Part shown: in pieces, positions 2,348-64,000 of the stretch
Layout of the letters: every line of letters begins with the position of its first letter
Position numbering within the stretch: position 1 is the stretch's first letter
NCBI RefSeq assembly: GCF_001194135.2
Contig: NC_068986.1
Span: 64,030,354 to 64,094,353 of the forward strand
Length of the DNA stretch: 64,000 nt
Source of the DNA: Octopus bimaculoides
Taxonomy: Eukaryota
Direction: 5' to 3'
The notes under the pieces: generated by a model
What the model saw: only the letters and a program-made list of their open reading frames with translations
Database searches by the model: none
Told to the model about the DNA's origin: nothing
Translations under genes and position numbers: made by a program

Positions 2348-4140
2348 NNNNNNNNNNNNNNNNNNNNNNNNNNNNNNNNNNNNNNNNNNNNNNNNNNNNN
2401 NNNNNNNNNNNNNNNNNNNNNNNNNNNNNNNNNNNNNNNNNNNNNNNNNNNNNNNNNNNNNNNNNNNNNNNNNNNNNNNNNNNNNNNNNNNNNNNNNNNN
2501 NNNNNNNNNNNNNNNNNNNNNNNNNNNNNNNNNNNNNNNNNNNNNNNNNNNNNNNNNNNNNNNNNNNNNNNNNNNNNNNNNNNNNNNNNNNNNNNNNNNN
2601 NNNNNNNNNNNNNNNNNNNNNNNNNNNNNNNNNNNNNNNNNNNNNNNNNNNNNNNNNNNNNNNNNNNNNNNNNNNNNNNNNNNNNNNNNNNNNNNNNNNN
2701 NNNNNNNNNNNNNNNNNNNNNNNNNNNNNNNNNNNNNNNNNNNNNNNNNNNNNNNNNNNNNNNNNNNNNNNNNNNNNNNNNNNNNNNNNNNNNNNNNNNN
2801 NNNNNNNNNNNNNNNNNNNNNNNNNNNNNNNNNNNNNNNNNNNNNNNNNNNNNNNNNNNNNNNNNNNNNNNNNNNNNNNNNNNNNNNNNNNNNNNNNNNN
2901 NNNNNNNNNNNNNNNNNNNNNNNNNNNNNNNNNNNNNNNNNNNNNNNNNNNNNNNNNNNNNNNNNNNNNNNNNNNNNNNNNNNNNNNNNNNNTTAAAGAT
3001 AGTTACACTAAAAATGAGGCAACTAATAGCAAAACTATTTGGTTGATTATTCCTCATGGGAGGCAAACTAAATCTAATCTTCCTTTCCAGTTTCGGGAAG
3101 CTATTATTAAGAATTTTCCAACTCGCACATGGTTGGGATTGCTTTTCCAACACAAAAAAATCTCTCACAAAATATTAGTCTGTTAAATAAGAATCCAATT
3201 ACTAATACTAACATTAATTTAGCTGATACCAACCATCTCACTAGAAATATTAATAACAAGGTTATTGTCTCTGAAGTCAATTCCAACAGAATTAAGTTTA
3301 TGTCTAGTAATTCTAAGATATTAAAAACTCTATATACCAGTGTAAAATTACTTCAGGTACCGATGTCTTTTTTTTATATAGGTAGTTCTTCTCAGTTAAC
3401 TAAAAGAATTTCTAATCATTACTCTACATTTAGGGATAGTAATAAACACAACAGTACAGGGCTAAGTAAATTAATTTGGTATCTATAAGACCATAATAAA
3501 CAATTTAATTTAGATTGGTTGATTCTCTCCATTTCCTTCCCATATGATAAAGGCAAAGAATTCTGCCAACTCTGTAATACTGAACTATTTTCTATTCTTT
3601 TTTCTAAGAATCCCCTTGTAAACACGGTTATAGAGTGTGCTTATCAATGTAAACATTGGCAGAAACATACCTTTAATTCATATAAGTGATATCTACCATT
3701 ATATATAATTTGAACATTAATTTTCTTACATTTCACTTCCACTAGATATATCTTTTTCCAAGCCATTAAGCTTTTATTTTAATTCACGTATCGCTCTATA
3801 TTTCTCCTTTATTAGTTTTCTGCTTATTTCTTTCCTTTACCCCTTCTCTTTCTACAGGCTACCTTTGATGTTATATCCTCTAACAGTTTTTTAAAAAAAT
3901 TCTGTTAAAATGTCTTATTGATGAGTTTGGTTTATGTCTTTCTTTCCCTGATGAGAAGATTACGCCATTTTATTCCTTTGGAATAATACCAATGTTGTCT
4001 TCGAAACATGTGTCGGACGTAAAAGAATTTGAATAACACCTACGTTTAACTCCATTTATTGATTTATATATATTATACTAAATATTTCACATCAACCCGG
4101 AGTTTCTACCTTTAAAAACAAGGTGTTATGTCCTTATTAC
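2093..4140 (+). mobile_element. Decayed Penelope-like retroelement (RT fragment, gap, GIY-YIG endonuclease remnant, terminal repeat with hammerhead)
   Basis: 2093-2310 encodes FYSSI...FDVTMGSSDSAQITDLVG (Penelope RT motif like FDVTMGSYDGAEVCELVG); 3340-3660 encodes YIGSSSQLTKRISNHYSTF...STGLSKLIWYL and CQLCNTE...CKH, typical of PLE GIY-YIG C-termini; frameshifted. Confidence 0.75.
3940..4027 (+). ncRNA. Type I hammerhead ribozyme motif (HHR-A)
   Basis: CTGATGA 3948-3954; helix II GAAGAT/GTCTTC with internal TTATTCC-TTT-GGAATAA hairpin; GAAA 4003-4006; helix III ACA-TG-TGT; GUC triplet ending 4014; helix I TCC/GGA plus TTCTT/AAGAA. Confidence 0.75.
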
Positions 4141-21144: not shown

Positions 21145-21212
21145 AAATCCCTAAGAAAATACCATGTTTATATTTATTCCTTGAATGATATTAGGTATTT
21201 TCTTAAGGATTT

Positions 21213-39639: not shown

Positions 39640-40560
39640 CTTCTAGAACTCAATTCTGCTGATATGGGCAGGTCTTCTCAAGAACTTCATATCGCCAGAT
39701 ATCTCGGTCCATTGTCATTTTCTTCGTGAGATTGGTCCTTACCACTTCATCCCATGTCTTCCTGGGTCTCCCTTTTCCACAAGTACCATCCACTTTCAGT
39801 GATCGGCACTTCTTTATGCAGCTGTCCTCATTCATTTACATCACATGTCCAAATCAACGTAGTCTTCTCTCTTACATGCTACATTTAATTCCTCTTGTGC
39901 CCAACTTTTCTCTCGATACATTTGCATTTTGTCATACATATGCACTGATGTTGCACATCCAATGAAGCATACTACCTTCGTTTCTCTCCAGTCTACGCAT
40001 GTCTTCTGCATTCAGAGCCCATGTTTCACTACCATAGAGTATAGCCATTTGTACACAAGCACCATATAGTCTACCTTTCATTTTGAGAGAGAGTCCTTTT
40101 GTTGCCAACAGAGGTAATAGCTTTCTGAACTTCCTCCACCCAATTCTTATTCTAAAAACAATACTTTCAGAGCATCCTCCACCATTGGTAATTTGGTCAC
40201 CTAGGTAACAAAAACTCTCTACAACCTCAAGAGAGCCTCCTAGGCATTTGAGAGAATCTGATCCCTGTGTGTCCTTAGTGCTTATTGTTCCTGCACATCT
40301 ACCACATACAAAGACTACTTTATCTGTTAATCTACCTGTGATACCACTGCACCTGTTATGTGTCCATAGTTTACACTGGGTGCAGCAAATGGAATGACTT
40401 CTGATTCTTTTCCTACATATGGAGCAGGGCTATTTACCTGATGGAAAGAAAGTTTTATCTTCTTTCTTACTAACAACCACTTTTGTCTTAGCTAGGTTCT
40501 TGAGTTAAACTAATTGAAAACTCAAAAGTTAGATCCATGTTTTGATAACTTTTTTTCAAG
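39640..40560 (-). mobile_element. RTE-clade LINE 3' fragment in MRPL2 intron 1
   Basis: GHVIYMNEDSCIKKCRSLKVDGTCGKGRPRKTWDEVV; related fragments at about 6690-7090 (5' part +), 45630-46080 (+), 61690-62230 (+). Confidence 0.75.
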
Positions 40561-46381: not shown

Positions 46382-46446
46382 TTATCCTTTAATGACTCCA
46401 ATAGGACGCAGTTTGATAGCCTTTTTACTAATTCCAGCCTCATGAC
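46382..46446 (-). CDS. RTCB: RTCB last coding exon (CHEAGISKKAIKLRPIGVIKG*)
   Basis: Matches the conserved RtcB C-terminus; acceptor TTTTAG|, phase 1. Confidence 0.95.
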
Positions 46447-47085
46447 CTAAAATAAATATCAATATTGAATATAAAACAAACTGAAGAACCAATTACAAAA
46501 CTGATTAATGTTTAAGGCTGTGATTCCCAACATGGGGCATGGTAATATTTTGGTGAGGCATGCGTAGGGTTACTACCTGTTGTACACAATATTTAGTATA
46601 CCAATAGAGAAAGGGGGCAATTTGAGAATGAGTTATTAAAAGAAAAAATTCTTTACATCCCTTCTGTGGACAATTTTATCAGATTTTGGATACTTTAGAG
46701 ACAACAGTTTGTTTTCATCATATTCATAAGATCTGATGTGGTATATGAAAACATGTAGGTAATTACAAACGCGCATGTTTGTGTGTGCATGCGTGTATGT
46801 AGTAAAGAACTGGTCAGTACTAAAAGCAATGCCATCTTAATTCCCTATGGAGAAATAAACTAGAGACAGACTTATATGTGTCTAAAAGTACTGACTCCTA
46901 TCTCTGGCGACAAAATCTAGGTACACAAGAAAAATGTGCTGCTGCAAAGTGGGGCAATAAATGGTGTTGGGGGTGAGGGATGAAAGAATTGAATGGGTTG
47001 AAATGGAGTGGAAGTAAAGGGTAGCGTCAGTGAAGGAAGAGAAAGACAGACATAGATAGAGATTTATGGTACTGGTAACACACAC

Positions 47086-47126
<41 letters not shown>

Positions 47127-47888
47127 CAGAGATGAAAATTAACAGGTCATTTTATTCTCACCAGTCAGTTTGTGAATTCAAACAAAAAGGTAAGAAAAAA
47201 CTTCCATCATTGATACAAAGGTTTTGCAGCTGAGAAGATTCATGGAATACTTTTTGATTCTTTTTGAGCATATTTTCTGAAAGTTTATACTGAAATCTTT
47301 TTGAAGAAATTGTTGAAAAAATTTGCTTGAACTAAAATCTCTTCGTGTTTGATTCAAAAATACATAAAATGAGTAGTGCAAGTAAAAAGAAGTTTGTCAA
47401 TATTCAGAGAAATATTTAAAATTTGGATTTATACCTGCTATCCACAATAAACTGTCACCAAGTAATGGCGAAAAACTCAGATTTTGTGAATTTTCCAAAG
47501 TCCTCTCCCCACTTCCCCAGAAAAGATTTTCCTACAGATTTCTTTATGATTGTAATCTATGCTGGTTGAAAGGTATTTATATAAAATTTCATTTAAGAAA
47601 AAAAAAAACATTTTCCTAAAAATTATGAGGGAAAAATTCGGATGTCCTCTTCACCCCCGTTGCTTTCCGCACATTTCTTTTCATATTCGTTTCCTACACA
47701 TTTTTTTAAACATCTGTTGCACTGTTTTTTTAAAATTTCGTTTCCGGGTAATATTGTGAACATTAACCAAATTTTGAATAACAAAAATTAAATATCACAA
47801 GGGGGCCTCAGGATTTTAGAAATAATTCGATGGGCATGGTCAAAAATCAGTTGGGAACCACTGGTTTAAAAGATAGAAATATACTCAC

Positions 47889-47931
47889 AAGTGTTTACAA
47901 CATCTGTGACATTTTTGTACGATTTTGGTGC
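47889..47931 (-). CDS. RTCB: RTCB exon (APKSYKNVTDVVNT), 43 nt
   Basis: TTTCAG| acceptor, |GTGAGT donor; matches the APESYKNVTDVVNTC motif. Confidence 0.9.
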
Positions 47932-50572
47932 CTGAAACGAGTTAATAATTGACACTGTTATAACAATACAACATTAATAACAAAATAATTAATTAAAAAA
48001 GCTTCTTAACTATTACTTTAAAGATGTTAAATTACAAAATTTCTTTGTCACTTGACATATTAGGTTGGAGGAGGAGAATGATGATAATGTCTATCATCAT
48101 CATCATCTAACATCCGTCTTCCATGATGGCATGGGTTGAAGGGGTCAATAGGATCTGAATGTCTTCTTTGGTATAATTTCTATGACTGGACGCCCTTCCT
48201 GATACCAACTATTTTACAGAGAGTACTGGGTGTTTTTTTTTTCTTGGGATGGTGCTAGTGAGGTCACCAAGTAACTTGCAAGAAAATTCCTCTTGATTAA
48301 GTTGGGGAGTAGTAAGAGGGCGTTGGCTTTATGCTGAGTGTCTATAGGTTAAAGTATGAAATGGAGACAAGAATAGGTGATTTACTGTAGAGGATAGGTG
48401 TGAGTAGCTGGAGAGACAGATGGCAATAAGGTATCAGGGCATACTCTCAAGGTACAAGAAGGCAAAGAGAAGAGTGGATGGATAAATATGCAAGAGTGTG
48501 AGAGAAGATGGATAGAGATAGAGGGGAGTGCAGTTAAGGGTGGACAAAAGGTCAATGGTAAATATCAATTTGGGAGAGAAAGATGAAATAGTAAGTGGCA
48601 ATACAGAAAGGGTGGAGAACAACAGCATAATAAACCTGTAGATAAATGGGGCGATAGAAGAGTGTGTGTGTGTGGGGGGATACATATGGAAGTCAGTAGT
48701 GGGTAGGGATGGATATAGTAAATAGTTAACAAAAGGGAGCGGTGTCAATGGTAGATAAAGGCTTGTCTGTCTGATTGACAGCAAAGACATTGTCTACAAT
48801 CAGTTTAGTATATTACCAAGTCAATATTGAGGTAATAAATAAGGAGAAACAATTCATACATAGCTTGCTGATATTACAGAGAACTGAACAGAAAAGTTTT
48901 GTGGATATGCTATATTTACTTGTAATGAAGCAGACTGAAGGTATGGGCATATTATGAGTGGATAATGCAAGCAAAGTGAAGAGGTGTCATGAAATAGATT
49001 ATGTTTACATTCATAATTTAATGTCCTGTTTTCCATGCTGGCATGGATTGGATGGTTTGACAGGAGCTAGCAAGCCGGAGAACTTCATCAGGGTCCAGTT
49101 GTCTGTTTTGGCATGGTTTCTAGGGCTGGATGCCCTTCCTAGTCTCACTCACTTTACAGAATGTACTGGGTACTTTCTACGTGACACCACACCAGTGGGG
49201 TTGCCAAATAACTTGCAAAATAAAAACCTCTGAGTTGAGAGGTTAGTGTATGATAGAGGGACAGAGATACTTGTCTTACTATAGGGGAGATATTTGGTTA
49301 TCCCAGAAAGTGAGAGAGTTAGAAAGATAGAGAGAAATTGATAATTTGGAGATGTATTGGGGTTTATCTACAGGAAACTGGAGCAGGGAGCATAAGTAGT
49401 ATGGAAGGGGATGCTCCATAAAAGTGTGAGTGGTTATGTTTAGAGACATGACAAGTGATGGTGAGGGAAATTGGAGTGGCTGGAATGGGTGGGGGATAAG
49501 GAAGATATGTGAGGGCATGGAGAGTGTGTGGTTAGGTACATGAATGGAGGGGCCTGCAGTAAATGTTGGGAAGATGGAGTTTTGACAGAGGTTTATAGAT
49601 TTGAGGGAGGGGGCATGGTCGAAAAGGGCATATATGTATAGGTGGCCACAATTTCACTTAACTTGATGCGTCTTCTCATCACTTTGTCCCACATTTTCTT
49701 GGGTCTACCCCATCTACAGATTTCCTCCACAATCAGAGATCAGCACTTCAACTTTTACTATTAACACCAAAGGACAAGGAGGGAGATTAAGGGTAAGTAT
49801 TTTGTAATAACCTATAACCTAGGTAGTAAAAATAACATCCCCAGATGATCTGGTACTGAGTTCTGATAGCCTTGTGAATTGAAGTAAATTAAGTATATTT
49901 TTGAATGTGCTCATTTTTCATGCCTACACATTTTCATTATTGTACATCTACTTAGTGACTCACATTACTACATCAGCAAGTATGGTTAAGTTATATACAT
50001 CACTGAAGTAGGATATTAAGACCAAAACACGCCCAGATCCCCNNNNNNNNNNATATTTACCAAACTGATTCAAATAATATCATTCATACATACATACACT
50101 GTTAAATTAAAAGCAGGAGCGAGGAAGTGAGACAGAAAGAGAGAGAGAGTGAGTGAGTGGTGACTGAAAGGAAGGTGGCGTTCGTTTTGTGTTTTTAAAT
50201 GTTTATCAGTATTTTCAGAGTAGACTGATACATACATCTAACGAAAAGTACATACACAGATACATTGTTAAATAACACCAGCAAATATTGGCTGTCACTT
50301 TTACTTTTCATTACCACATCAGGATAAAACAAATGGCTGAGTATTCCACAGACATGCACACCATTAACGTAGTTCTTGGGGAGATTCAGCCTCACACAGA
50401 ATGTGACAAGGCTGGCTCTTTGGATTACAGCTACAACTGATTTTGGCCAGCTGAGTGGACTGGAGCAAGATAAACCTTCAAGTGGTTGGAAGAAAATGCA
50501 TACACACACACACATATATATATACACCTATGTATATACATATATACATATGTATGTAAACATATATATGTG

Positions 50573-50612
<40 letters not shown>

Positions 50613-51452
50613 AATATAATGTATGTGTATATATGTATATAAATGTATTTATATATATGCATGTATATACGTATATACATGTATACATGTTTGTGTTTGT
50701 CTCTGTTTGTTCCCCCACCACCATTACTTCACATCCTATGCAGGTTTTTTTTGCGTCCCCGTAACCTAGTGGTTTAGCAGAGGCTGACAGAATAAGCACC
50801 AGGCTCACAAGGAATAAGTCCAGGGTTCGATTTCTTTGACGAAAAGGTGGTGCTCCAGCATGGCCACCCTCAAATGACTAAAACGAGTAAAAGAATACCA
50901 GAAGAATTTTTTGTACCTCCAAATGAAGAAGTTTCTTTGAATATGTACAATGTATTTTAAGGATAATAGTAACTCTGTGGGCGCTTAACAGAGATATTTT
51001 AGTTGGATTATGTAGTTATCAGTTTTACACTTCTTTCTATATTTTGTAAGTGTCACAATATAGAAACATTTCCCACTGTTCCAGCACACGATTTACAGAT
51101 GCTTACATTTTGTATGTTGTCCGTGAAGTTTCCACAGGACCAGCTAGTGAATAACGATAATAATATTATACATACATGTATAAACATGCACACTGATGCA
51201 CATACATGTGCAGAAACAAACAAACAAAAAGAACTCCACTCTGATAACAGACAGTCAACGACTAATGAAGAGGTTGCAAGAAGTAATGAAAATTTTAGGA
51301 AAGAAAAAATAATAAATAAATAAATGAGTGGAAATTGAACCTGTGAATGTGTTAATTAACAAGGCATTAAAACAGAATGACTCTCCTCAGACACAACAAA
51401 ATAAGAATATTGCTGCAGGTAAAAGAAAAGGAAAAAAAAAAAATCAACTTAC

Positions 51453-51572
51453 TTCTTCCATAACAAGTTTAGGGGAAGCTACTCGTATACTGATTCCTTG
51501 AGCATTTAAGGCCTCTAATACGTCCATGTAATCAAGATTACGACGAGATTTGGCACGGGAAAGTGCTCGGCC
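51453..51572 (-). CDS. RTCB: RTCB exon ([15 protein letters not shown]...[12 protein letters not shown]), 120 nt
   Basis: Near-identical to metazoan RTCB; AG/GT boundaries, phase 0. Confidence 0.95.
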
Positions 51573-52212
51573 CTAATTTAAACAAGAGAAGTTTTATACA
51601 TTTACTAACAGGAAAAACAAAACAAACAAAAAAATAATTTTACATTGAACAATACTTTTCATAAATATCATCATTTAACGTCCGCTTTCCATGCTAGCAT
51701 GGGTTCGGGACTGGCGATGCGGATGGCTACACCAGACTCCAATCTGATCTGGCAGAGTTTCTACAACTGGATGCCCTTCCTAATGCCAACCACTCCAAGA
51801 GTGTAGTGGGTGCTTTTTACGTGCCACCGGCACGAGGGCCAGTCCGGCGGTACTGGCAACGGCCACACTCAAATGGTGTTTTTTATGTGCCACCTGCACA
51901 GGAGTCAGCCAATGTTTTGTTCACATGTCACCAGCACAAGTGCCAGTAAGGCGTAGTTGGAAACGATCGCATTCAAATGGTGCTTTTTACGTGTCACCGG
52001 CATGAGACCACTGCTCTGGCAGTGATTCCACTTGGATGATGTTGTTAGCGCTCCACTGGCACGGGTGCCAGTCATCGAATTTGGTTCAGTTTCGATCTCA
52101 TTTGCCCCAACAGGTCTTCACAAGCTGAACTTAGTGTCTAATGAGTGAAGGTTGGCCTGAGTGCCAGTCATCAAATTTAGTTCAATTTCAATTTCACTTG
52201 CCTCAACAGGTC

Positions 52213-53431
52213 TGGGGTGCGTAAGATATTTGAGGACAGATTTATGTTTATAAAAAACAGCTATATAATAACAGATAGTAACTTTATCAAAAAATGCTAT
52301 GAGGATGAAAATAAACCTTATTTATAATGTTATTCAATAAAGCCACCATCAGCTTCAACAACTGCTTCTATATGAGATCTAAATCATGTACATGCTCAAA
52401 TCAAGTAGTCCTGGTTCATTTTGGACATTACTCTTACTGTGGTACCTTTCAAAGAATCTTTGGTGTTATGGGTGTGTTCATTGACTGTTCTCTCAACAAT
52501 GATCCACATGCAATAGTCCAATGGATTGAGATCTGTGGAATTAGGGGGCCAAATGTTAGGGGTTATGCGATCATGAAAATTTTCAGCCATCCATTCCTGT
52601 GTTACCAAAGCCATGTGTGATAATGCAGAGTCTTACTGAAACACATATGGCCTTCCATTGCATACACTATCTATCCAGGGCTTAACAATTATTTCCAGGA
52701 CCTCAATGTAGGTGGCAGAGTTAACTCTAAGGCCTTGTGGAAAGAAGGAGGCATCACATCTTCATTGCTGGCAATCCCTAAAACCATGAGAGTTGCAGGA
52801 AATTTTGTATGCAAAACACTTGGAACTTCAGAAGGGTCTTTACATAGCCATTTGTCATTTCTTCTGTTAACTTTTTGATCATGGTCGAAGTTTTTCACGT
52901 TTGAGAAAAACCAAATCAAATCTTCTTCTGCTGGATTTTTCAGTTTGTTTAAGAGCCTTTTAGATCTGATGTACTGATTTTCTTTTACTTTTCCTGACAA
53001 ATTGACCTTTCCTCATTATATAAGACTTATATCTGTCTTTGTAGACAACAACTTTCACTGTTCCTTCAGACACATGGAGATCTTTTGCAATTGACGTCAT
53101 ATTGAACTTGCTGGATAAACCCAGGTGTTCTGATGACTTTAGAGTGTTTAGAATGCTCTTTATGCTTTGATACTGGTGATACGTCACCATCTTCAGTCTC
53201 TAGCTCCTTACAAACTTTGTAGACGAAAGATCTAGGAACTTTCAAAATTCAAGATATTTCTGAATTGCTATGCTCAGCCTTTACAGCCACAATGGTAACA
53301 TGCCTCTTCATTTCTTGAGTAAGCTGAGGGTCTGTCATTATTATTTTCTGAAACAAAGATTATACAGAGTTAGCAAAAAATGCAGCAATGACCCAGAAAA
53401 GCTATGTCCTCAAATACCTTACGCACATCTA
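52213..53431 (-). mobile_element. maT-family (DD37D) Tc1/mariner element, defective, in RTCB intron
   Basis: 22-bp TIR core GTGCGTAAGATATTTGAGGACA (52217-52238 vs 53405-53426, 1 mismatch); FQ*DSA...WPPNSTDLNPLDY has 37 residues between the Asp residues. Confidence 0.85.
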
Positions 53432-55874
53432 TAGAAATAAAAATGAGAATGTGTGTCAAAAGTGAAACAAAAACACTCATGTCAAATACTTTCACTTTAA
53501 AAATGAAACTATTCTACTAACTGAAACAATCACATTTCGATACTGTAATGACAGATACTTTCAGAAAGAGAGAAAGAGAGAGAGAGATGTATATGTATAC
53601 ATATAGATGTATATGTACACATTATTCCACTAACTGAAACAATCACATTTCTATACTGTAATGACAGATACTTTCAGAAAGAGAGAGAAAGAGATGTATA
53701 TGTATACATATACATGTATATGTACACGTATATNNNNNNNNNNNNNNNNNNNNNNNNNNNNNNNNNNNNNNNNNNNNNNNNNNNNNNNNNNNNNNNNNNN
53801 NNNNNNNNNNNNNNNNNNNNNNNNNNNNNNNNNNNNNNNNNNNNNNNNNNNNNNNNNNNNNNNNNNNNNNNNNNNNNNNNNNNNNNNNNNNNNNNNNNNN
53901 NNNNNNNNNNNNNNNNNNNNNNNNNNNNNNNNNNNNNNNNNNNNNNNNNNNNNNNNNNNNNNNNNNNNNNNNNNNNNNNNNNNNNNNNNNNNNNNNNNNN
54001 NNNNNNNNNNNNNNNNNNNNNNNNNNNNNNNNNNNNNNNNNNNNNNNNNNNNNNNNNNNNNNNNNNNNNNNNNNNNNNNNNNNNNNNNNNNNNNNNNNNN
54101 NNNNNNNNNNNNNNNNNNNNNNNNNNNNNNNNNNNNNNNNNNNNNNNNNNNNNNNNNNNNNNNNNNNNNNNNNNNNNNNNNNNNNAGATATACTTTCATT
54201 GTGATTTCTGCAATGTGGTACATAAATTGTCAAGTAAATGAGACGCATCTTTGCCTCCACTGATTCACTTGCAAAGTGTTGAGTAAAATTATTTCGTTGC
54301 AGACCTCCTTTGGGTCTTTTTATTATCACTACGACACACATAGTCCCCAGTTGGTAACATTGATTTCAAGGCCCTCCTAGATGAGAGACTGGCATTCCAC
54401 TTAATGTCTATGTTCCATGCTGGCATGGATTGGAGAGTTATTAATGTAGAAATATGGTATCGTAGCTACTAACAGTTGAGGGTTGTGTAGTCTAGATGGC
54501 GTTTTTAGATTTCATTATTCTCTTTAACCCGGGCAAAGCCGGGTATTTCTGCTAGTTGTATATATAGACAAAGGAGTGGCTGTGTTATAAGTATCTTGCT
54601 TCCCAACCACACGGTTCTTGGGTTCAGTCCCACTGTGTGGCACCTTGGGCAAGTGTCTTCTACTATAGCCTCAGGCCAATCAAAGCCTTGTGAGTGGATT
54701 TGGTAGATGGAAACTGAAAGAAGCCCATCATATATCATCATCCAGTGTTTTAAATCCGGGTTTTGTCCCCGTTAACGAGGGTGGCCTGATATACCTCAAT
54801 ACCATAGCAACTGAGGTAGGCAGGTGCAGCCCACCCCAACCTTTGGGCTGGCTGGTGCCCATTGGATTTTTTATGGGGAGTATGCCCTTGCTTACCCCCC
54901 AACCTCAGTGGTCTCCAGACCAAGGCCTCTACCATGATTTTTAAGAAATGCAGTAGAAAACTAGATCAGGAAGGCAGAGATGCTACTCCCTGAGACCCCT
55001 TTTGGAGCCCCACTACCCTATATACATATATATATATAATGTGCAGGAGTGGCTGTGTGGTAAGTAGCTTGCTTAACAACCACATGGTTCCGGGTTCAGT
55101 TCTACTGCGTGGCACCTTGGGCAAGTGTCTTCTACTATAGCCTTGGGCCGACCAAAGCCTTGTGAGTGGATTTGGTAGATGGAAACTGAAAGAAGCCCGT
55201 CGTATATATATTTGTGTGTCTGTATTTGTCTCTCCACCATTGCGTGACGACCGATGCNNNNNNNNNNNNNNNNNNNNNNNNNNNNNNNNNNNNNNNNNNN
55301 NNNNNNNNNNNNNNNNNNNNNNNNNNNNNNNNNNNNNNNNNNNNNNNNNNNNNNNNNNNNNNNNNNNNNNNNNNNNNNNNNNNNNNNNNNNNNNNNNNNN
55401 NNNNNNNNNNNNNNNNNNNNNNNNNNNNNNNNNNNNNNNNNNNNNNNNNNNNNNNNNNNNNNNNNNNNNNNNNNNNNNNNNNNNNNNNNNNNNNNNNNNN
55501 NNNNNNNNNNNNNNNNNNNNNNNNNNNNNNNNNNNNNNNNNNNNNNNNNNNNNNNNNNNNNNNNNNNNNNNNNNNNNNNNNNNNNNNNNNNNNNNNNNNN
55601 NNNNNNNNNNNNNNNNNNNNNNNNNNNNNNNNNNNNNNNNNNNNNNNNNNNNNNNNNNNNNNNNNNNNNNNNNNNNNNNNNNNNNNNNNNNNNNNNNNNN
55701 NNNNNNNNNNNNNNNNNNNNNNNNNNNNNNNNNNNNNNNNNNNNNNNNNNNNNNNNNNNNNNNNNNNNNNNNNNNNNNNNNNNNNNNNNNNNNNNNNNNN
55801 NNNNNNNNNNNNNNNNNNNNNNNNNNNNNNNNNNNNNNNNNNNNNNNNNNNNNNNNNNNNNNNNNNNNNNNNNN

Positions 55875-55905
<31 letters not shown>

Positions 55906-56203
55906 GTGTGTATATGCTTGTCCCCGCAACATCGCTTGACAACTGATGCTGGTGTTTACATCCCCGTAACTTAGTGGTTCGGCAAAAGACACTGATAGAA
56001 TAAGTACTAGGCTTACAAAGAATAAGTCCTGGGGTCGATTTGCTTGACTAAAGGCAGTGCTCCAGCATGGTCGCAGTCAAATGACTAAAACAAGTGAAAG
56101 AATAAAAGAAAGAATACATAAACTTCCTATATAATTACCCCCAATCTCCGACCATAAACAAAATGTAATATCAATTTTTATGTCAAAAAAATAGGACACT
56201 CAC

Positions 56204-56314
56204 AGCTCCATGACATGTTGTTCCAAATGTATCTTCCATTCCCTGATCAGTACCAGTCAGTACATAACTACAAGTTCCCATTGTTCCACCAATCAAAACA
56301 GGTTGACCAGTTAA
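56204..56314 (-). CDS. RTCB: RTCB exon ([21 protein letters not shown]...FGTTCHGA), 111 nt
   Basis: Contains the conserved PVLIGGTMG motif and the CHGA catalytic His motif; AG/GT, phase 0. Confidence 0.95.
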
Positions 56315-56699
56315 CTGTATTAAAGAAAAGATAAAAATACACAGGTCATCTTTGTTCTTAAAGACAAGCAAGATTAAATAACCAGATAAGTATTCATTAC
56401 ATGTTCTGCTGCAATAGTTAGTGACAAGAACATGTGAGTATAAAAAAAATCCCGAAGTATGACATTATGAAAAACAGTTTGAGCAATCTAGATATGCAGA
56501 AGAATTGTATCCTAGACCCGCCTAGCCAATATATTCTTGGTAAAAATGATTATAACATCCGTAACACTGTTGTTACTGTTTTCTGTTTTAACCTATCCAT
56601 TTTGGATACTGAAGCTAAAGCACTATACTTTCCCAGATTTATATCTAACATTCCAGTCAGTGATTTCTTCTTAAGATTTGAAGTGACTGAACACTTTGT

Positions 56700-58082
56700 C
56701 ATGTATTCTGGTAGTGGGTGGATCCAGCACATTGAGATTGTAGGGCATGACATGTTCAATACTGTGTATGCCCTCCCTGGGTGTTCAGAATGGCCATACA
56801 CCGTTGGTACATGGAATGAATGAGGCAGTTCACAAAAGCCATTGCCAACTGTGCCCACACCCTGAGGAAAGCTGCTTCCAGTTCCACATGAGTTGTTGGC
56901 TTTGGGACCACCTGGTTCAGCAGTGTCTGGATTTCATTCCACAGGTGTTCAATTGGGTTCAAATCTGGGCTGAGTGCCGGCCATGGCATGGTTTGGCTGT
57001 TGCGCTGACACAGGAAGTTCGTGGTGACCATGGCTGTGTGGGAGGGAGCATTGTCTTGCTAGAACACATGGCTATGGTGATGCATGAAGAAAGACATGAT
57101 GTGAGGTCTTAGGCTCTGGTCAATGTAGCGCTGCACTGTGATACCATTCCCTCTGCTGGCACCAACATTTTGGAACACATGGGGCCCAATTCTCTGATTC
57201 AGGCCTATAGCGCCCCAAACTATGATGCTTTGGCCACCCCACACGTTTCTCTCCATGATACATGCATCTCTGTAGCATTCACCCCCTCCTACACCACACC
57301 TCACTCTGCCATCCGAGGTGGAAACGCAGCACTGGCTCAGAGAAGACTACTGATCTCCATTGTTGATGCCGTCAGTGTCGGTGCTGTGTAGCCCACTGTA
57401 GTCATGCCTGATGATGGTGAGCAGTGAAGACAGGCCCTCAAGCTGGACAATGGCAATGCAGGTTGTTGGCGGCCAGTCGACATCATACTGTGTCATCGCT
57501 GATGGGTCATTATCCAGTGTCTTGTGAGCTGTCACACTGGATGGTCTGAAGCGATCATGGAGGTGTTGCAGATGGATGAAGTAGTCCTGCCTGGAGGAGT
57601 GGTCACCTGGGGGCGCCCTCTGCGGGCATGGTCTGCAGTGCTATTGGTGTTGTATCGCTGCTGCAGGGGAGAGATGGTGTTGACATGGACATTGTAAACT
57701 TTTGCAACAACTAGGGCACACTGCCCTGCTTGCAATTAGCTGATAGCTTGTTCTCTCTGTGCTGCTGACAACAGTTCATACCTGATGTGTCCAAATTACA
57801 AATGTCAGGAACACAGTTCAAGTTGATTTTTATACTCATGATCTCCACAAGATGCACGTGCATTTCACTTTTCATGACAATTGTTTACAACTGTCACCCA
57901 TGGCATTCAATGCAGCTGTGTTTTGGCGTTTCAGGCAAGTTGAAAAGTTACCTGCAATTTGGGTCTCAGCCATGAACCAGTATGTCTTGGAATATTTACA
58001 CTTACATCCCCAAAATAAATTTTCAGAATTTACCATATAAAAATGACATTTGAAAAAGTCGCATTTCTTTTGCAGTTCAGTG
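56700..58082 (-). mobile_element. Tc1 (DD34E) element, defective, one TIR visible, in RTCB intron
   Basis: TA-CACTGAACTGCAAAAGAAATGC terminus at 58082; F*QDNAPSH...WPALSPDLNPIEHLW (34-residue spacing); RRGRPQVTT HTH linker. Left boundary approximate. Confidence 0.85.
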
Positions 58083-58941
58083 TATGTGGAAACAATATGC
58101 GCGCACACACACACACAATCACCATCATTTAATATTGTTTTTTTTTTTTTAACTATTTTGGTGGTACACTACTACACGAGTCAGTTCTTATTTGGAGTTA
58201 TTGGCCTCCTAGATGGTTTAGAAACTATGCTTCACACATGCATTCCATTTCCCGCATAGTTTCTATGGTTGGAAGTCCTTAACACCACCATTGTACAGAG
58301 GGTACATGGATGCTTTTATTGTGGCACCAAACACACACACACACATAAAAAATCAATCCTATTTTCATTAAAAAAAAAAAAATGAAAATGCTCAATTTTC
58401 CATTGCCATATTAAGTCCACAACTTGAAAAAAAAACTTGATCAACCCAGGTGGTGGTGGTTGTTTAGTTCCTGATCACCCTACATAAGATATTAATAAAT
58501 ATATATTTGAAATAATATCCATATGTATTTAATCTTAAAATATAAACAATGACACAGGTTGAAAGCTTCACTTTAATTAGTAATGCACCATTGTATTAGG
58601 TACTAGTTTGTCATATTTAAAATGACAGGCTAAACTTGAACTCAACACTGCTAGTTAATGATACACTTATCAATTTAGCATTACTGCTTATAGCACCAAG
58701 TTGTTTCTACTCTGCAAAAAGTAGAAATAAGCCATTTCAAAGTTAGGTGTCTTGGTCACAAACTCAATACAGTATCCCTGACAGGATGTGAACTGTCAAT
58801 CTCTTGGATGGTTGCTATCACCTATGCAGATTCTTAGAAACATATAAGAAGGTCTAAAATTGAACCAGAATGAGAACATTAAAAATTCGTCTAGCTTGAA
58901 AAAACAATATTATTGATAAAATCCTCAAAAGCAAAACATAC

Positions 58942-59130
58942 CTGGTAGTCTACAGGAATGAGAGGATGATGCGGAGGAAATGCTCGTGTCGACCCCTTTC
59001 GATGTACCAATAGGCTTGTCTGCTTGCCGTCAATAAAGTGTTCTTCTACTTTAGCAATGTTGTGTGAGACATCGTAAATCACATGCATATCCAGGTCATC
59101 AGGAGTGCTGTTGAAGATTTTGGCGAAAGC
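58942..59130 (-). CDS. RTCB: RTCB exon ([27 protein letters not shown]...[21 protein letters not shown]), 189 nt
   Basis: DVSHN and HRKG metal/substrate motifs of RtcB; AG/GT, phase 0. Confidence 0.97.
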
Positions 59131-60592
59131 CTGACCAAAAATTTAAAAGGTTTTAATATTATATTCAAATAAAATAGACAACATAAAAAATAGTAGTATG
59201 CACACACACAGATGTAAGTTATATATAAACACACATTTTTTTAACCTTTTAGTCAAAGGAAAGCCAGTGCAAATGATGTTTTTCAGAGCTTTTCAGATAA
59301 GTGAAAAGGGAGGAAGGAAGGTATCCTCAAACCAGAGACTTGGCCTGAATGTTTGCAACAGAATTGACTCTGCTAAAGTGTTAAATTGGGTGATGGACTA
59401 TGTCTATCATCAAAGAAGGTCTTGCTGAGATTTGAACTTAGAACATGGAACGAATATCATGACACACCCAACCCAACATTCTTACAGTTTGCTTAATCCA
59501 CAGCACTAGACTGGTTTTTTTGTTTTTCAGCTCTGAAAAGATAATAGACAAAGCTGATCTCAGTCAGATTTGAACTTAGAGCACAGAAAGTCAGAGGAAA
59601 TACCCAAAGATATTCTATCCAATGTTCTAATTCTCATCACTGAACATCCATTTTGCCAGGTTTGCATGAGTTGGCCAGAATTTATTGAGGCAGATTTTCT
59701 ACAGCAGGATACTCTTTCTGTGGCCAACACTTGTTTCCAGGCAAGGTAATATTTCCCCATGGTCAAACATTTTTGCAGAATGTTGGAAATGAATGATATT
59801 TACAACAATTACACAATATCAAAACAAAAGAAGACATAAGCACACACACACATATATGAAGGGCTTCTTTCAGTTTCTGTTTACCAAAAAATTCACTCAC
59901 ACTGCTTTGGTTAGAAAACACTTGCCCAAGGTGCCACAAAGTGAGATGAACTTGAAACCATGTTGTTGGGAAGTAAACTTCTTAACCACATAGCCACACC
60001 TGACTGCCAATTTGCTGTCTGTATGCATATATACAGACTTTCTCTGATACACATAAGTCTTCTAGTATGTAAATAGAGGTCCTAAAAATTGATATTTGTA
60101 CAAATGAATGGCTCTTCAGTATTAGTTTATTTTTATTAACAGAGCAGTATCCACTTATCTATGGTTAGATATTTGTTTACAATTAAAATAATGTGCTTTG
60201 TTTGTAACTATTTTAATAGGAATCTATAAATGAGAAAGGCCTCATCTTTAAGGTGTTAACATTTATGGTGGCAAGCCGGCAGAATTGTCAACACAACGGG
60301 CAAAATGCTTTGCGGCATTTCACCTGTCTTTATGTTCTGAGTTCAAATTCTGCCGAGATTGACTTTGCCTTTCATCCTTTCAGATTCGATGAAATAAGTA
60401 CCAGTTGAGCACTGGAGTCGATGTAATCGACTTATCCTCTCCATCGAACTTGCCAGCCTTGTGATAGAATTTGAAACTAATATTTATGGCTGCTGATTAT
60501 TTCTGACGATCTACTGTGAAGAGTTTTTCATTTCATATGTTGTATTTTTAATAACAGCATTAAAGTAATAGGATGGTACAGAAAGAATCTAC

Positions 60593-60768
60593 CTGTCTGG
60601 AAAGGAATGTCATGCTAGTCCGGTTGACCCAAGCATAGTTTGCAGCTGCAGCCATGCTTTTAAGGTAATCTTGACCTTCTTGAGAGTTGATTTGCGCACA
60701 GGCAAGTTGACGGTCATTCACTTCAATTTTGTCCCGCTTCATTGCTTTCTCCATGGCAACTAAAGCAT
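60593..60768 (-). CDS. RTCB: RTCB exon ([25 protein letters not shown]...[19 protein letters not shown]), 176 nt; upstream exons lie outside the window or in a gap
   Basis: Matches the RTCB DRQLAC and [10 protein letters not shown] motifs; acceptor TTTGTAG|, donor CAG|GTAGAT. Confidence 0.95.
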
Positions 60769-62383: not shown

Positions 62384-63297
62384 NNNNNNNNNNNNNNNNN
62401 NNNNNNNNNNNNNNNNNNNNNNNNNNNNNNNNNNNNNNNNNNNNNNNNNNNNNNNNNNNNNNNNNNNNNNNNNNNNNNNNNNNNNNNNNNNNNNNNNNNN
62501 NNNNNNNNNNNNNNNNNNNNNNNNNNNNNNNNNNNNNNNNNNNNNNNNNNNNNNNNNNNNNNNNNNNNNNNNNNNNNNNNNNNNNNNNNNNNNNNNNNNN
62601 NNNNNNNNNNNNNNNNNNNNNNNNNNNNNNNNNNNNNNNNNNNNNNNNNNNNNNNNNNNNNNNNNNNNNNNNNNNNNNNNNNNNNNNNNNNNNNNNNNNN
62701 NNNNNNNNNNNNNNNNNNNNNNNNNNNNNNNNNNNNNNNNNNNNNNNNNNNNNNNNNNNNNNNNNNNNNNNNNNNNNNNNNNNNNNNNNNNNNNNNNNNN
62801 NNNNNNNNNNNNNNNNNNNNNNNNNNNNNNNNNNNNNNNNNNNNNNNNNNNNNNNNNNNNNNNNNNNNNNNNNNNNNNNNNNNNNNNNNNNNNNNNNNNN
62901 NNNNNNNNNNNNNNNNNNNNNNNNNNNNNNNNNNNNNNNNNNNNNNNNNNNNNNNNNNNNNNNNNNNNNNNNNNNNNNNNNNNNNNNNNNNNNNNNNNNN
63001 NNNNNNNNNNNNNNNNNNNNNNNNNNNNNNNNNNNNNNNNNNNNNNNNNNNNNNNNNNNNNNNNNNNNNNNNNNAATCGCATAACCCCCACCCCTAATTT
63101 TCCATGACTGGTTAGGGCCTGAAATACTCTAAACAGATACATAGTATGTTGCTTAGTCAAATTAGCCCATCATTTACTCCACAAATGCTTTGTTGTCAAT
63201 GCTGCACTTTCCCATATCACCTGTTTCAACATAACTGTAATATATTATATACAAACTATGTAATTTTAATCCTGAGCAATGCCGGGTATCTCTGCTA

Positions 63298-63346
<49 letters not shown>

Positions 63347-63854
63347 AGGACTTGCTACCTATACCCAAGAAATGGACCATGCACAGAGGTATGTATAGAT
63401 TATTTTCAAAACACAATTTCTGTAATTCATTGTGGTAGCATACGTTTCTCTTTGAGAGTGGACCTGTTTGTACCCAAGAAATGGACTTGCTGTTTGCACC
63501 CAAGAAATGGGCAACACACAGGTTATAATTTATTTCTATAACATAACAATTTAAAGGAATGTTAAAGAGAATTTATTTTAATAACATGAACTGTCTGTAT
63601 AGAGAATCAAATAAAAAAAAAATGAAAAACTGAAAGTTTTGTAAATAGGGGTAGGGTAAGGTTGAATATTTAAGAGAATTTGTAGCATGTAAGAGGTTTG
63701 TAAGCAATTCCAGAACAACAAAATCCGTTACTTTCACTGCAAAATTTAAATTTCGTTTGTGTCTAAATATTTTCGTTCTTTGAAACCATATATATATATC
63801 GATTTAAATGAGAGCTCGAAACTGATCCATTGAAAATACTTTATTGTAGTAATG

Positions 63855-63943
63855 ATAATGACCTATGATCATTTCAATGCAATATCCAGATTGATTCATG
63901 CATATTATAAAATATGGGATACTGCATCTCCTCAGGGCCTTAT
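63855..63943 (-). ncRNA. Type I hammerhead ribozyme motif (HHR-D), sense strand of an RTCB intron
   Basis: Minus strand: helix I ATAA-GGCC / GGTC-A-TTAT; CTGAGGA 63935-63929; 12-bp helix II GATGCAGTATCC/GGATATTGCATT (2 G-U); GAAA 63875-63872; helix III is the perfect palindrome ATGATCAT; AUA triplet ending 63864. Confidence 0.75.
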
Positions 63944-64000
63944 TAGTAGGCAGACAATAAAAATAGATAACATTCGTAGTTGACCATCTATTCTTATTGT

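What the first reader, a model, noticed from the sequence alone, without database searches (positions are those of the whole stretch)
63855..63943. Intact hammerhead ribozyme in the sense strand of an RTCB intron: a self-cleaving RNA inside the pre-mRNA of the ligase that repairs such cuts
Seen: complete core (CUGAGGA, GAAA, AUA), 12-bp helix II, 8-bp helix I with one bulge, and a perfect 8-nt palindrome (AUGAUCAU) as helix III, all on the minus strand upstream of the RTCB exon ending at 60768. The missing N-terminal half of RTCB cannot fit in the 692-N gap, so this position is almost certainly intronic. Established: hammerheads leave 2',3'-cyclic phosphate and 5'-OH ends, which RtcB ligates; palindromic helix III marks dimer-acting hammerheads of Penelope-like elements; intronic hammerheads occur in amniote genes such as RECK. 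Inference: RTCB pre-mRNA might cut itself and be repaired or circularised by RtcB, giving feedback control. The simpler alternative is a recent repeat insertion with no function, and intron cleavage need not block splicing.
Basis: partly seen in the sequence, partly recalled or inferred. Interest (0 to 1): 0.8.

Follow-up and report, generated by a model that had tools for sequence, protein, structure and literature searches.

The report
Retrotransposon hammerhead ribozyme in RTCB intron
The hammerhead ribozyme motif is real and structurally intact, but it is the kind carried at the tail of Penelope-like jumping genes in octopus genomes, so it is most likely an ordinary transposon insertion in an RTCB intron, not a control device for RTCB.

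Summary
It has the full hammerhead core, a 12-bp helix II, a 4+4-bp helix I with one bulge and an 8-nt palindromic helix III. It lies upstream of, and in the same sense as, the RTCB exon at 60768-60593. It is not chance: a descriptor scan finds only this hit, against 0.095 expected per shuffled window.

The motif belongs to a transposon-borne family. The same window holds a second hammerhead (3942-4020, + strand) 256 nt downstream of a decayed GIY-YIG endonuclease ORF. The long relatives of that ORF carry the published hallmarks of Hydra-clade Penelope-like elements.

More hammerheads sit 90-320 nt downstream of related ORFs in Octopus sinensis and in Logan run contigs. A covariance model built only from four of those outside copies finds both window motifs. 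The finding scores 31.9 bits (E about 7e-6); the next hit scores 16.6. The six copies share one architecture, with 15 of 20 pairs covarying.

The RTCB self-cleavage and repair loop has no support. Activity, the element body beyond base 64000 and the orthologous intron could not be tested.

The parts
63936..63943 (-). Hammerhead helix I, 5' strand (AUAAGGCC)
   Evidence: It pairs with 63863-63855. The four core-proximal pairs have a pairing probability of about 0.85.
63929..63935 (-). Core C3-A9 (CUGAGGA)
   Evidence: Aligned to the CUGANGA columns of models R1 and R3.
63876..63928 (-). Helix II domain: a 12-bp stem (63928-63917 with 63887-63876; G10.1.U11.1 at its base) and a 29-nt loop (63916-63888) with an inner CAUAUU/AAUAUG hairpin and a GAAU element
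   Evidence: pairing probability about 1. The stem and loop lengths match those of the Octopus sinensis copies.
63873..63875 (-). Core G12 A13 A14
63865..63872 (-). Helix III, the 8-nt palindrome AUGAUCAU (A15.1 to U16.1). It gives 2 bp plus a GAUC loop as a monomer and 8 bp as a dimer.
   Evidence: Monomer pairing probability is about 0. All six family members have an 8-nt helix III here: palindromic in five (perfect in L131, L132 and this copy; with G.U wobbles in the HHR#2 pair), decayed in L128.
63863..63864 (-). Predicted cleavage site: after A17 (63864), before G1.1 (63863)
   Evidence: Follows from the hammerhead numbering applied. Not tested experimentally.
63855..63863 (-). Helix I, 3' strand (GGUC A UUAU; A63859 bulged)
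63800..63854 (-). Tail between the hammerhead and the TA run, inferred to be the 3' end of the element. It contains AATAAA at 63845-63840 and ends ...GCTCTCATTTAAATCGA.
   Evidence: It resembles the CTCCATT..(TA)n ends of the other copies by eye only; a tail profile did not reach it.
63788..63799 (.). (TA)6 microsatellite directly after the tail, the presumed insertion target
   Evidence: Hydra-clade elements insert into (TA)n (PMC8557442). This is weak evidence on its own, because the window holds 21 such runs.
63954..64000 (-). An 18-bp hairpin (G.U pairs allowed) 10 nt upstream of helix I, cut by the window end
   Evidence: Whether it belongs to the element is unknown.
60593..60768 (-). RTCB exon (DALVAMEK...FLSRQ), nearest downstream exon to the motif
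   Evidence: Acceptor AG at 60770-60769, donor GT at 60592-60591.
46385..60768 (-). C-terminal half of RTCB (human residues 271-505) in six exons
   Evidence: tblastn, 71-90% identity per exon; Pfam PF01139 relatives.
3942..4020 (+). Second hammerhead of the same family (HHR#2): CUGAUGA, G-C at 10.1/11.1, an imperfect 12-position helix II, GAAACAUGUGUC
   Evidence: R3, a model built without any window sequence, scores it 61.6 bits.
2995..3686 (+). Decayed ORF of a Hydra-clade Penelope-like element (linker plus GIY-YIG-like endonuclease, with an in-frame stop), 256 nt upstream of HHR#2
   Evidence: (Pfam GIY-YIG, E 0.0036, below the cut-off).
4021..4075 (+). Tail of the HHR#2 element, ending ...ACTCCATTTATTGATT plus a short TA run
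   Evidence: tail profile from outside copies, E 0.0016.

Best explanation
The motif is the 3'-terminal hammerhead of a Penelope-like retroelement (PLE) of the Hydra-clade type. It may equally be a 5'-truncated copy of such an element.

The element inserted, in the sense orientation, into a (TA)n microsatellite inside an RTCB intron. Its RT-endonuclease body, if present, lies beyond the window end at 64000.

Shown:
- The RNA has a complete type I hammerhead core.
- It has the family's fixed architecture: a 5-6-bp helix I, a 12-bp helix II closing a loop of about 30 nt with a GAAU element, and an 8-nt palindromic helix III.
- Relatives of this architecture sit 90-320 nt behind PLE endonuclease ORFs and end at TA runs.

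Inferred:
- If it cleaves, it cuts after A63864 and leaves 2',3'-cyclic phosphate and 5'-OH ends.
- As described for PLE hammerheads, cleavage would work poorly as a monomer and better when two copies pair through the palindromic helix III.
- Its role belongs to the retroelement's own RNA (processing of tandem or read-through transcripts), not to RTCB.
- In the RTCB pre-mRNA it is most likely a near-neutral passenger.
For: 1. The motif and its significance are established.

2. The same window holds HHR#2 at 3942-4020 (+), 256 nt downstream of an ORF remnant with a YIG...R..H / CxxC..E..N..CxH endonuclease-like domain. Its homologues include an Octopus sinensis protein. The O. sinensis locus keeps the hammerhead core exactly, while the flanks are 70-74% identical. 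There is a compensatory C-G to U-A change in helix I, and both copies end at a TA run.

3. The ORF family has 2864 representatives at E<=1e-3. Its long members carry DKT, a CxCx5C linker, YIG and CxxC..E..CxH. These are the diagnostic traits of the Hydra clade, which is also said to carry hammerheads and to insert into (TA)n (PMC8557442).

4. Further hammerheads lie downstream of related ORFs at L131 3407-3492, L132, L128 and L126. L131 is fully intact and, like the finding, has G10.1.U11.1 and A17.

5. Independent detection:
- Model R1, built only from the HHR#2 pair, ranks the finding as the best non-self hit (23.8 bits, E about 3e-4, full length with one 1-nt gap).
- Model R3, built from four non-window copies, gives it 31.9 bits (E about 7e-6). 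The next hit scores 16.6 bits and lacks the core.
- A control of 655 kb of unrelated DNA holding the linear core gave a best score of 14.1 bits.

6. In the six-sequence alignment, 86.7% of cells are paired and 15 of 20 pairs change on both sides. None of 500 shuffles reached this, and slid registers gave 32-45% paired.

7. A (TA)6 run lies 64 nt after the cleavage site. RTCB introns hold several other transposon remnants.
Against: - No PLE ORF can be seen next to this copy, because only 57 nt lie upstream before the window ends.
- Primary-sequence profiles do not link it to the other copies, either for the hammerhead (nhmmer) or for the tail. The link rests on core plus structure.
- The alignments used for covariation were fitted to the model and hold only six sequences, some of them decayed.
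- The RT identity of the long homologues rests on motifs read by eye against a published description. Pfam finds no RT, and GIY-YIG only below its cut-off.
- This copy is unusually perfect, which a young insertion explains but selection would also explain.
- The (TA)n argument is weak alone, with 21 such runs in 64 kb.
Confidence: 0.8

Rival explanations
1. Domesticated intronic ribozyme. The hammerhead cleaves RTCB pre-mRNA in cis, and RtcB religates or circularises the products, giving autoregulation.
For: - The motif is in the sense orientation in an RTCB intron.
- Core and helices are fully intact, whereas most sister copies are decayed.
- RtcB circularises hammerhead-cleaved retrozyme RNAs in vitro (PMC7229834).
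- Conserved intronic hammerheads exist in amniotes (PMC6155905).
Against: - The motif is a member of a transposon-borne family, with a TA target next to it.
- No evidence of conservation could be obtained.
- Predicted folding disfavours an active monomer, and there is no second copy within 780 nt downstream.
- PLE hammerheads cleave poorly in vitro (PMC4209133).
- From general knowledge (the exon-tethering experiments), cutting an intron need not affect splicing.
- With many transposon remnants in these introns, the RTCB coincidence is unremarkable.
Confidence: 0.03
2. The hammerhead belongs to a small non-autonomous element (a retrozyme-like or SINE-like repeat, or a solo pLTR) that merely shares the PLE-type ribozyme. 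No RT-endonuclease ORF lies upstream.
For: - No ORF is visible in the 57 nt upstream.
- A strong hairpin lies immediately upstream, reminiscent of highly structured retrozyme RNAs.
- Primary sequence is unrelated to the ORF-linked copies.
- Most type I hammerheads in invertebrates are in non-autonomous repeats (PMC7229834).
Against: - There is no tandem repeat and no second copy in the visible 900 nt.
- The architecture matches the ORF-linked copies to within 1 nt.
- The layout of hammerhead, tail of about 50-65 nt, then TA run is the same as in the ORF-linked copies.
Confidence: 0.13
3. Chance resemblance: an ordinary 12-bp genomic hairpin that happens to be flanked by CUGANGA and GAAA.
For: - Rfam reports no hammerhead here.
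- The folding z-score is unremarkable (-1.3).
- About 60-70 distinct non-microsatellite hairpins of >=12 bp occur per strand of this window.
Against: - Shuffles give 0.0025 per window already at helix II >=8.
- None of 118 real sequences with the same linear core had the helices.
- Models trained on outside hammerheads score it 24-32 bits, against 14-17 bits for the best background.
- My own estimate combines the hairpin density with the flank probabilities, assuming independent positions and a genome of about 2.7 Gb. It gives well under 0.05 such sites per genome.
Confidence: 0.02

Closest known systems
Hammerheads of Penelope-like elements, in particular the Hydra clade of C-terminal-endonuclease PLEs (Cervera & de la Pena 2014, PMC4209133; Craig et al. 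2021, PMC8557442)
   Same: - Type I topology.
- Larger than usual helix II and a short helix I.
- Palindromic helix III, implying action as a dimer.
- Position 3' of an RT-endonuclease ORF (shown for the sister copies).
- A (TA)n insertion target.
- High sequence variability with covariation within a genome.
   Different: - Helix II is longer still: 12 bp closing a loop of about 30 nt, against the 7-8 bp reported.
- There is no unpaired nucleotide between A9 and 10.1.
- G10.1.U11.1 replaces the reported conserved G-C in half of the copies.
- The adjoining ORF is not visible for this particular copy.
Rfam Hammerhead_1 (RF00163, type I hammerhead)
   Same: Same core and helix order. The Octopus sinensis sister copy L120 7530-7614 gets a full-length sub-threshold match (17.9 bits, E 0.072).
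   Different: The finding itself, and the intact sister copy L131, get no match even at E<=10. The long helix II insertion and the G.U closing pair are the likely reasons.
Metazoan non-LTR retrozymes with type I hammerheads (Cervera & de la Pena 2020, PMC7229834)
   Same: Type I hammerhead with a 2-bp helix III capped by a palindromic tetraloop. Cleavage products are substrates of RtcB in vitro.
   Different: Retrozymes are short tandem repeats with one hammerhead per unit and are expressed as circular RNAs. No tandem unit is seen here.
Conserved intronic hammerheads of amniotes (HH9 in RECK, HH10; de la Pena & Garcia-Robles 2010, cited in PMC6155905)
   Same: Sense-strand type I hammerhead inside an intron of a protein-coding gene, thought to derive from retroelement hammerheads.
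   Different: Those are defined by deep conservation at orthologous positions and match their own Rfam models. Neither is shown here.

Membership tests
Hammerhead ribozyme, type I | Conserved core: C3 U4 G5 A6 N7 G8 A9, G12 A13 A14, A15.1-U16.1, H17 | tested here: met
   CUGAGGA at 63935-63929, GAA at 63875-63873, A63872-U63865, A63864.
Hammerhead ribozyme, type I | Three helices around the core, with helix I open-ended | tested here: met
   Helix I has 4+4 bp, helix II 12 bp, and helix III 2 bp as a monomer or 8 bp as a dimer. It is the only such site in the window.
Hammerhead ribozyme, type I | G10.1-C11.1 closing pair of helix II | tested here: not met
   The pair is G63928.U63876, a wobble. 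The same wobble occurs in 3 of 6 family copies, including the intact Octopus sinensis copy.
Hammerhead ribozyme, type I | Helices supported by covariation among homologues | tested here: met
   In alignment A8 (6 sequences), 15 of 20 pairs change on both sides and 86.7% of cells are paired; 0 of 500 shuffles reached this; slid registers gave 32-45%. Caveat: the alignment is fitted to the model and the set is small.
Hammerhead ribozyme, type I | Match to the curated covariance model (Rfam RF00163 and related) at gathering score | tested here: not met
   No hit at gathering score or at E<=10. The sister copy L120 scores 17.9 bits against a cut-off of 34.
Hammerhead ribozyme, type I | Loop-loop or loop-bulge tertiary contact between helices I and II | tested here: inconclusive
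   Helix I has a bulged A, and loop 2 has a GAAU element shared by the family. With a 12-bp helix II the canonical geometry is not evident. No 3D test was possible.
Hammerhead ribozyme, type I | Site-specific self-cleavage | not testable with these tools
   Needs in vitro transcription. Folding predicts a helix III probability of about 0 as a monomer and a competing hairpin.
Penelope-like element (Hydra clade) 3' hammerhead | Hammerhead lies in the pLTR or 3' region next to an RT-GIY-YIG ORF | not testable with these tools
   The window ends 57 nt upstream of the motif. For sister copies the feature is met: the hammerhead is 256 nt (window HHR#2), about 90 nt (L131) and about 320 nt (L126) behind the ORF.
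Penelope-like element (Hydra clade) 3' hammerhead | Recognised by a structure model trained only on ORF-linked copies | tested here: met
   R1 gives 23.8 bits (E about 3e-4). R3 gives 31.9 bits (E about 7e-6). Background is at most 16.7 bits in the window and 14.1 bits in 655 kb of control DNA.
Penelope-like element (Hydra clade) 3' hammerhead | Palindromic 15.2-16.2 and loop 3 (dimer-type helix III) | tested here: met
   AUGAUCAU is a perfect palindrome. The other copies have ACAUAUGU or ACAUGUGU. The trait is listed in PMC4209133.
Penelope-like element (Hydra clade) 3' hammerhead | Unpaired nucleotide between A9 and 10.1 (a trait of the min-HHR variants) | tested here: not met
   Helix II starts directly after A9 in all six copies.
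Penelope-like element (Hydra clade) 3' hammerhead | Insertion into (TA)n | tested here: met
   A (TA)6 run at 63799-63788 follows the tail. TA runs also follow HHR#2 and L120. This is weak alone: the window has 21 TA runs.
Penelope-like element (Hydra clade) 3' hammerhead | ORF hallmarks of the clade: DKT, CxCx5C linker, GIY-YIG without CCHH, CxxC and CxH around E and N | tested here: met
   This was tested for the element next to HHR#2, not for the finding's copy. Among the 150 best homologues, 129 have Y[IV]G, 134 have CxxC..E, 100 also have CxH, 57 have the CxC linker, and both proteins of about 690 aa have DKT. Pfam support is only sub-threshold.
Metazoan non-LTR retrozyme | Head-to-tail repeats of about 170-400 bp, each with a hammerhead | tested here: not met
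   There is no second copy and no tandem unit in 63075-64000 or elsewhere in the window. The upstream side is cut by the window end.
Amniote-type conserved intronic hammerhead (HH9/HH10) | Conservation at the orthologous intron position across species | not testable with these tools
   No cephalopod RTCB locus could be retrieved. There is also no match to the Rfam HH9 or HH10 models.

The most novel reading that the evidence does not exclude
The exceptionally well-preserved copy in the RTCB intron has been co-opted. It is retained at the orthologous position in other octopods, and it cleaves the RTCB pre-mRNA (alone, or with a second upstream copy). The amount of spliceable transcript or of an intron-derived circular RNA then depends on RtcB activity, which would give a ribozyme/ligase feedback loop.
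Probability: 0.03. Interest if true: 0.75.

Novelty: new member of a known kind. Interest (0 to 1): 0.22.

Why it matters
As it stands, this is an annotation result. It identifies a hammerhead subclass in octopus genomes with a 12-bp helix II, a loop of about 30 nt and an 8-nt palindromic helix III. The subclass is tied to Hydra-clade Penelope-like elements, and Rfam's models miss it or score it below threshold. A dedicated covariance model would let these elements and their 3' ends be mapped in cephalopod genomes.

The RTCB location would matter only if the copy proved conserved and active. It would then be a rare case of a self-cleaving RNA sitting in the gene for the enzyme that seals its cleavage products. 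Nothing found here points that way.

Tried and rejected
- **Rfam.** A whole-window scan at gathering score and local scans at E<=10 gave no hammerhead at the finding or at HHR#2 in the window. Only the sister copy L120 gets a sub-threshold Hammerhead_1 hit.
- **Copies within the window.** Self-BLAST of 63600-64000 found only TA-microsatellite matches. The repeat finder gave nothing relevant.
- **Orthologous RTCB intron.** A protein search with the RTCB C-terminal half returned only fragments at <=88% identity and no cephalopod gene model, so no orthologous locus was retrieved.
- **Peptide and ORF look-ups.** The peptide across the motif has no homologues. Exact ORF look-ups near the motif are not on record.
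- **Metagenome scans.** The exact 26-mer gave 0 hits. The gapped core pattern gave 118 hits, all without the helices, and these were used as a control.
- **Literature string search** for the sequence: none.
- **Sequence-only profiles.** nhmmer from the HHR#2 pair and from the tails does not reach the finding, so I do not claim primary-sequence homology. The apparent tail similarity (score within the shuffle range) is kept only as a visual resemblance.
- **Possible truncated copy** at 20783-20742: no significant alignment.
- **Protein domain evidence.** Pfam finds no RT in the long ORF homologues, and PDB sequence searches find nothing. The Octopus sinensis ORF copy has no Pfam hit.
- **Hairpin at 21145-21212.** The models score it 16-19 bits, but it lacks the catalytic core and was rejected as a hammerhead.

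Full report
**1. The observation**

The minus strand from 63943 to 63855 reads as follows:

AUAAGGCC / CUGAGGA / GAUGCAGUAUCC - 29-nt loop - GGAUAUUGCAUU / GAAA / UGAUCAU / A / GGUCAUUAU

- The full hammerhead core is there (C3-A9, G12-A14, A15.1-U16.1, H17 = A63864).
- Helix II has 12 bp, with two G.U pairs. One of them is the closing 10.1/11.1 pair.
- Helix I has 4 bp, a bulged A63859, then 4 more bp.
- Helix III is the perfect palindrome AUGAUCAU.
- The predicted cut is 63864|63863.

RTCB is on the same strand. Residues matching human 271-505 are encoded by six exons from 60768 down to 46385. The acceptor AG is at 60770-60769 and the donor GT at 60592-60591. Nothing matching residues 1-270 is in the window. 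Those 810 coding bases cannot fit in the 691-N gap. The motif is therefore upstream of the known exons and in sense. It is intronic unless the scaffold is misjoined.

**2. Is it more than chance?**

A descriptor scan of both strands used CUGANGA, helix II, GAAA, helix III, U-H and helix I. It finds this site alone at helix I >=4 and helix II >=4. The results from 400 dinucleotide-preserving shuffles of the window were:

| Threshold | Expected hits per window |
|---|---|
| helix I >=4, helix II >=4 | 0.095 |
| helix II >=8 | 0.0025 |
| helix II >=12 | none seen |

As a control with real sequence, 118 metagenomic stretches holding the same linear string (CTGANGA-N20-50-GAAATGATCATA) were examined. 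None has both helices.

Two results argued for caution. Rfam reports no hammerhead here, neither at gathering score nor at E<=10 in a 401-nt scan. The folding energy is also unremarkable (z = -1.3).

**3. What it is**

The laxest version of the scan turned up a second hammerhead-like motif on the + strand at 3948-4014. Immediately upstream of it (2995-3686) lies a broken ORF with a YIG...R..H...CxxC..E motif. Pfam GIY-YIG matches it at E 0.0036, below the cut-off.

Its closest relatives are an uncharacterised Octopus sinensis protein and a Logan-assembly protein. In the O. sinensis locus the ORF aligns at 70% and the hammerhead region at 74%. The core strings CUGAUGA and GAAACAUGUGUC are identical between the two. 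Helix I shows a compensatory C-G to U-A change, and both copies end about 50 nt later in ...CTCCATT..TT.ATT followed by a TA run.

A profile search of 1.84 billion representative proteins found 2864 relatives. The long ones carry DKT, a CxCx5C linker, YIG, and CxxC / CxH around conserved E and N. This is the trait list Craig et al. 2021 give for the Hydra clade of C-terminal-endonuclease Penelope-like elements. They also report that these elements are short, carry hammerheads, occur in molluscs and almost always insert into (TA)n (PMC8557442, section 11).

I read the RT-like motifs (YRDDG, SNHP) by eye. Pfam does not confirm an RT.

**4. Linking the finding to that family**

A covariance model built only from the HHR#2 pair (R1) was run over the whole window without filters. 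It ranked the finding as its best non-self hit: 23.8 bits, E about 3e-4, aligned end to end with a single 1-nt gap.

Four more hammerheads were then found downstream of related ORFs in O. sinensis and in Logan contigs. One of them, L131 3407-3492, is fully intact. Like the finding, it has G10.1.U11.1 and A17.

A model built from four copies, none from the window (R3), finds both window motifs:

| Hit | Bits | E-value |
|---|---|---|
| HHR#2 (3942-4020) | 61.6 | 1.2e-13 |
| The finding (63941-63858) | 31.9 | about 7e-6 |
| Next hit (plain hairpin, no core) | 16.6 | 0.069 |

In 655 kb of unrelated control DNA the best R1 score was 14.1 bits.

In the six-sequence alignment:
- 86.7% of pair cells are standard pairs.
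- 15 of 20 pairs change on both sides.
- No shuffle of 500 reaches these values, and slid registers give 32-45% paired.

These alignments are fitted to the model and the set is small, so I treat this as good but not final support.

All six copies share the same layout: a helix I of about 5 bp, a 12-position helix II, a loop of about 30 nt with a GGAAU-like element, and an 8-nt helix III (decayed in L128). Rfam's Hammerhead_1 gives a full-length but sub-threshold hit (17.9 bits) on the O. sinensis copy of HHR#2. It gives none on L131. Its silence on the finding therefore reflects the unusual helix II domain, not a defect peculiar to this copy.

**5. Context of the finding's copy**

A tail of about 64 nt follows the hammerhead. 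It contains AATAAA (63845-63840) and is followed by (TA)6 at 63799-63788. This is the same order seen in the ORF-linked copies.

TA runs are common in this window (21 in all), so this is only mildly supportive. A tail profile from outside copies does not reach this tail, and a sequence-only profile of the hammerhead does not reach it either. The copy therefore belongs to a different, diverged lineage of the family.

The expected ORF would lie beyond base 64000, so the window cannot show it. RTCB's other introns in the window hold Tc1/mariner and pogo-type transposase remnants. A retroelement end here is not unusual.

**6. How it most likely works**

By analogy with published PLE hammerheads, single motifs were inactive in vitro and dimers cleaved weakly (PMC4209133). 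From the folding here:
- Helix II has a pairing probability of about 1.
- The proximal pairs of helix I have a probability of about 0.85.
- Helix III as a monomer has a probability of about 0.
- A local hairpin, AAUGAUC/GGUCAUU, competes for A13, A14 and the cleavage site.

I therefore expect little or no cleavage of a lone copy in the pre-mRNA. Cleavage would need a second copy in cis, pairing through the palindrome. No second copy exists in the 780 nt downstream, and the upstream side is unknown. The ribozyme's role, if any, is in processing the retroelement's own transcripts.

**7.

The chemistry cited is right. Hammerhead products are RtcB substrates, and RtcB circularises retrozyme RNA in vitro (PMC7229834). 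But nothing ties this copy to RTCB regulation.

**8. Verdict**

The motif is a new member of a known kind: a PLE-type hammerhead, in an octopus lineage, with a longer helix II domain than described. Interest is low to moderate. The small remaining chance of domestication can be settled by the orthologous-intron comparison and a cleavage assay.

Noticed in passing
window 2995-4075, + strand: A decayed Hydra-clade Penelope-like element. It comprises a linker/GIY-YIG-like ORF remnant (2995-3686, with an in-frame stop at 3486-3488), a second hammerhead (3942-4020) and a tail ending in a short TA run. A 645-N gap and a (TA)n run lie just upstream.
   Followed up: yes
L131 3407-3492 (Octopus sinensis CM016860.1): A fully intact sister hammerhead: CUGAAGA, a perfect 12-bp helix II with G.U at its base, the ACAUAUGU palindrome, A17 and a 6-bp helix I. 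It lies about 90 nt behind a related ORF. Rfam does not detect it.
   Followed up: partly
window 63954-64000, - strand: An 18-bp hairpin (G.U pairs allowed) with an 11-nt loop, 10 nt upstream of the hammerhead and cut by the window end. It could be part of the same element's 3' UTR.
   Followed up: no
window 21145-21212, + strand: A hairpin that the hammerhead models score at 16-19 bits. Its loop (UUUAUUCCUU..GAAU) resembles loop 2 of HHR#2, but the catalytic core is absent. It may be a decayed relic or just a hairpin.
   Followed up: partly
window 63348-63521: Three copies of a 21-39-nt motif (CCATTTCTTGGGTRCAAACAG on the minus strand) spaced 26 and 109 nt apart, next to a (TA)n run. Origin unknown.
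   Followed up: no
window 56759-57058, 52399-52632, 34197-35347, 39935-40429 (all - strand): Transposon remnants inside RTCB introns: two DDE_3 (Tc1/mariner-type) fragments, DDE_1 (pogo-type) fragments, and an ORF with a PHD-finger match followed by sequence that looks like a LINE ORF2 C-terminus.
   Followed up: partly
whole window: Nine runs of N (10 to 691 bases) and 21 (TA)>=6 microsatellites in 64 kb. Several N gaps start or end in TA runs, so assembly breaks coincide with the microsatellites that PLEs target.
   Followed up: no
protein search: The search with the RTCB C-terminal half returned only fragments (<=411 aa, <=88% identity). It returned no full-length metazoan RtcB, although Octopus sinensis proteins are in the collection. 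The candidate pre-filter seems to disfavour long targets.
   Followed up: no
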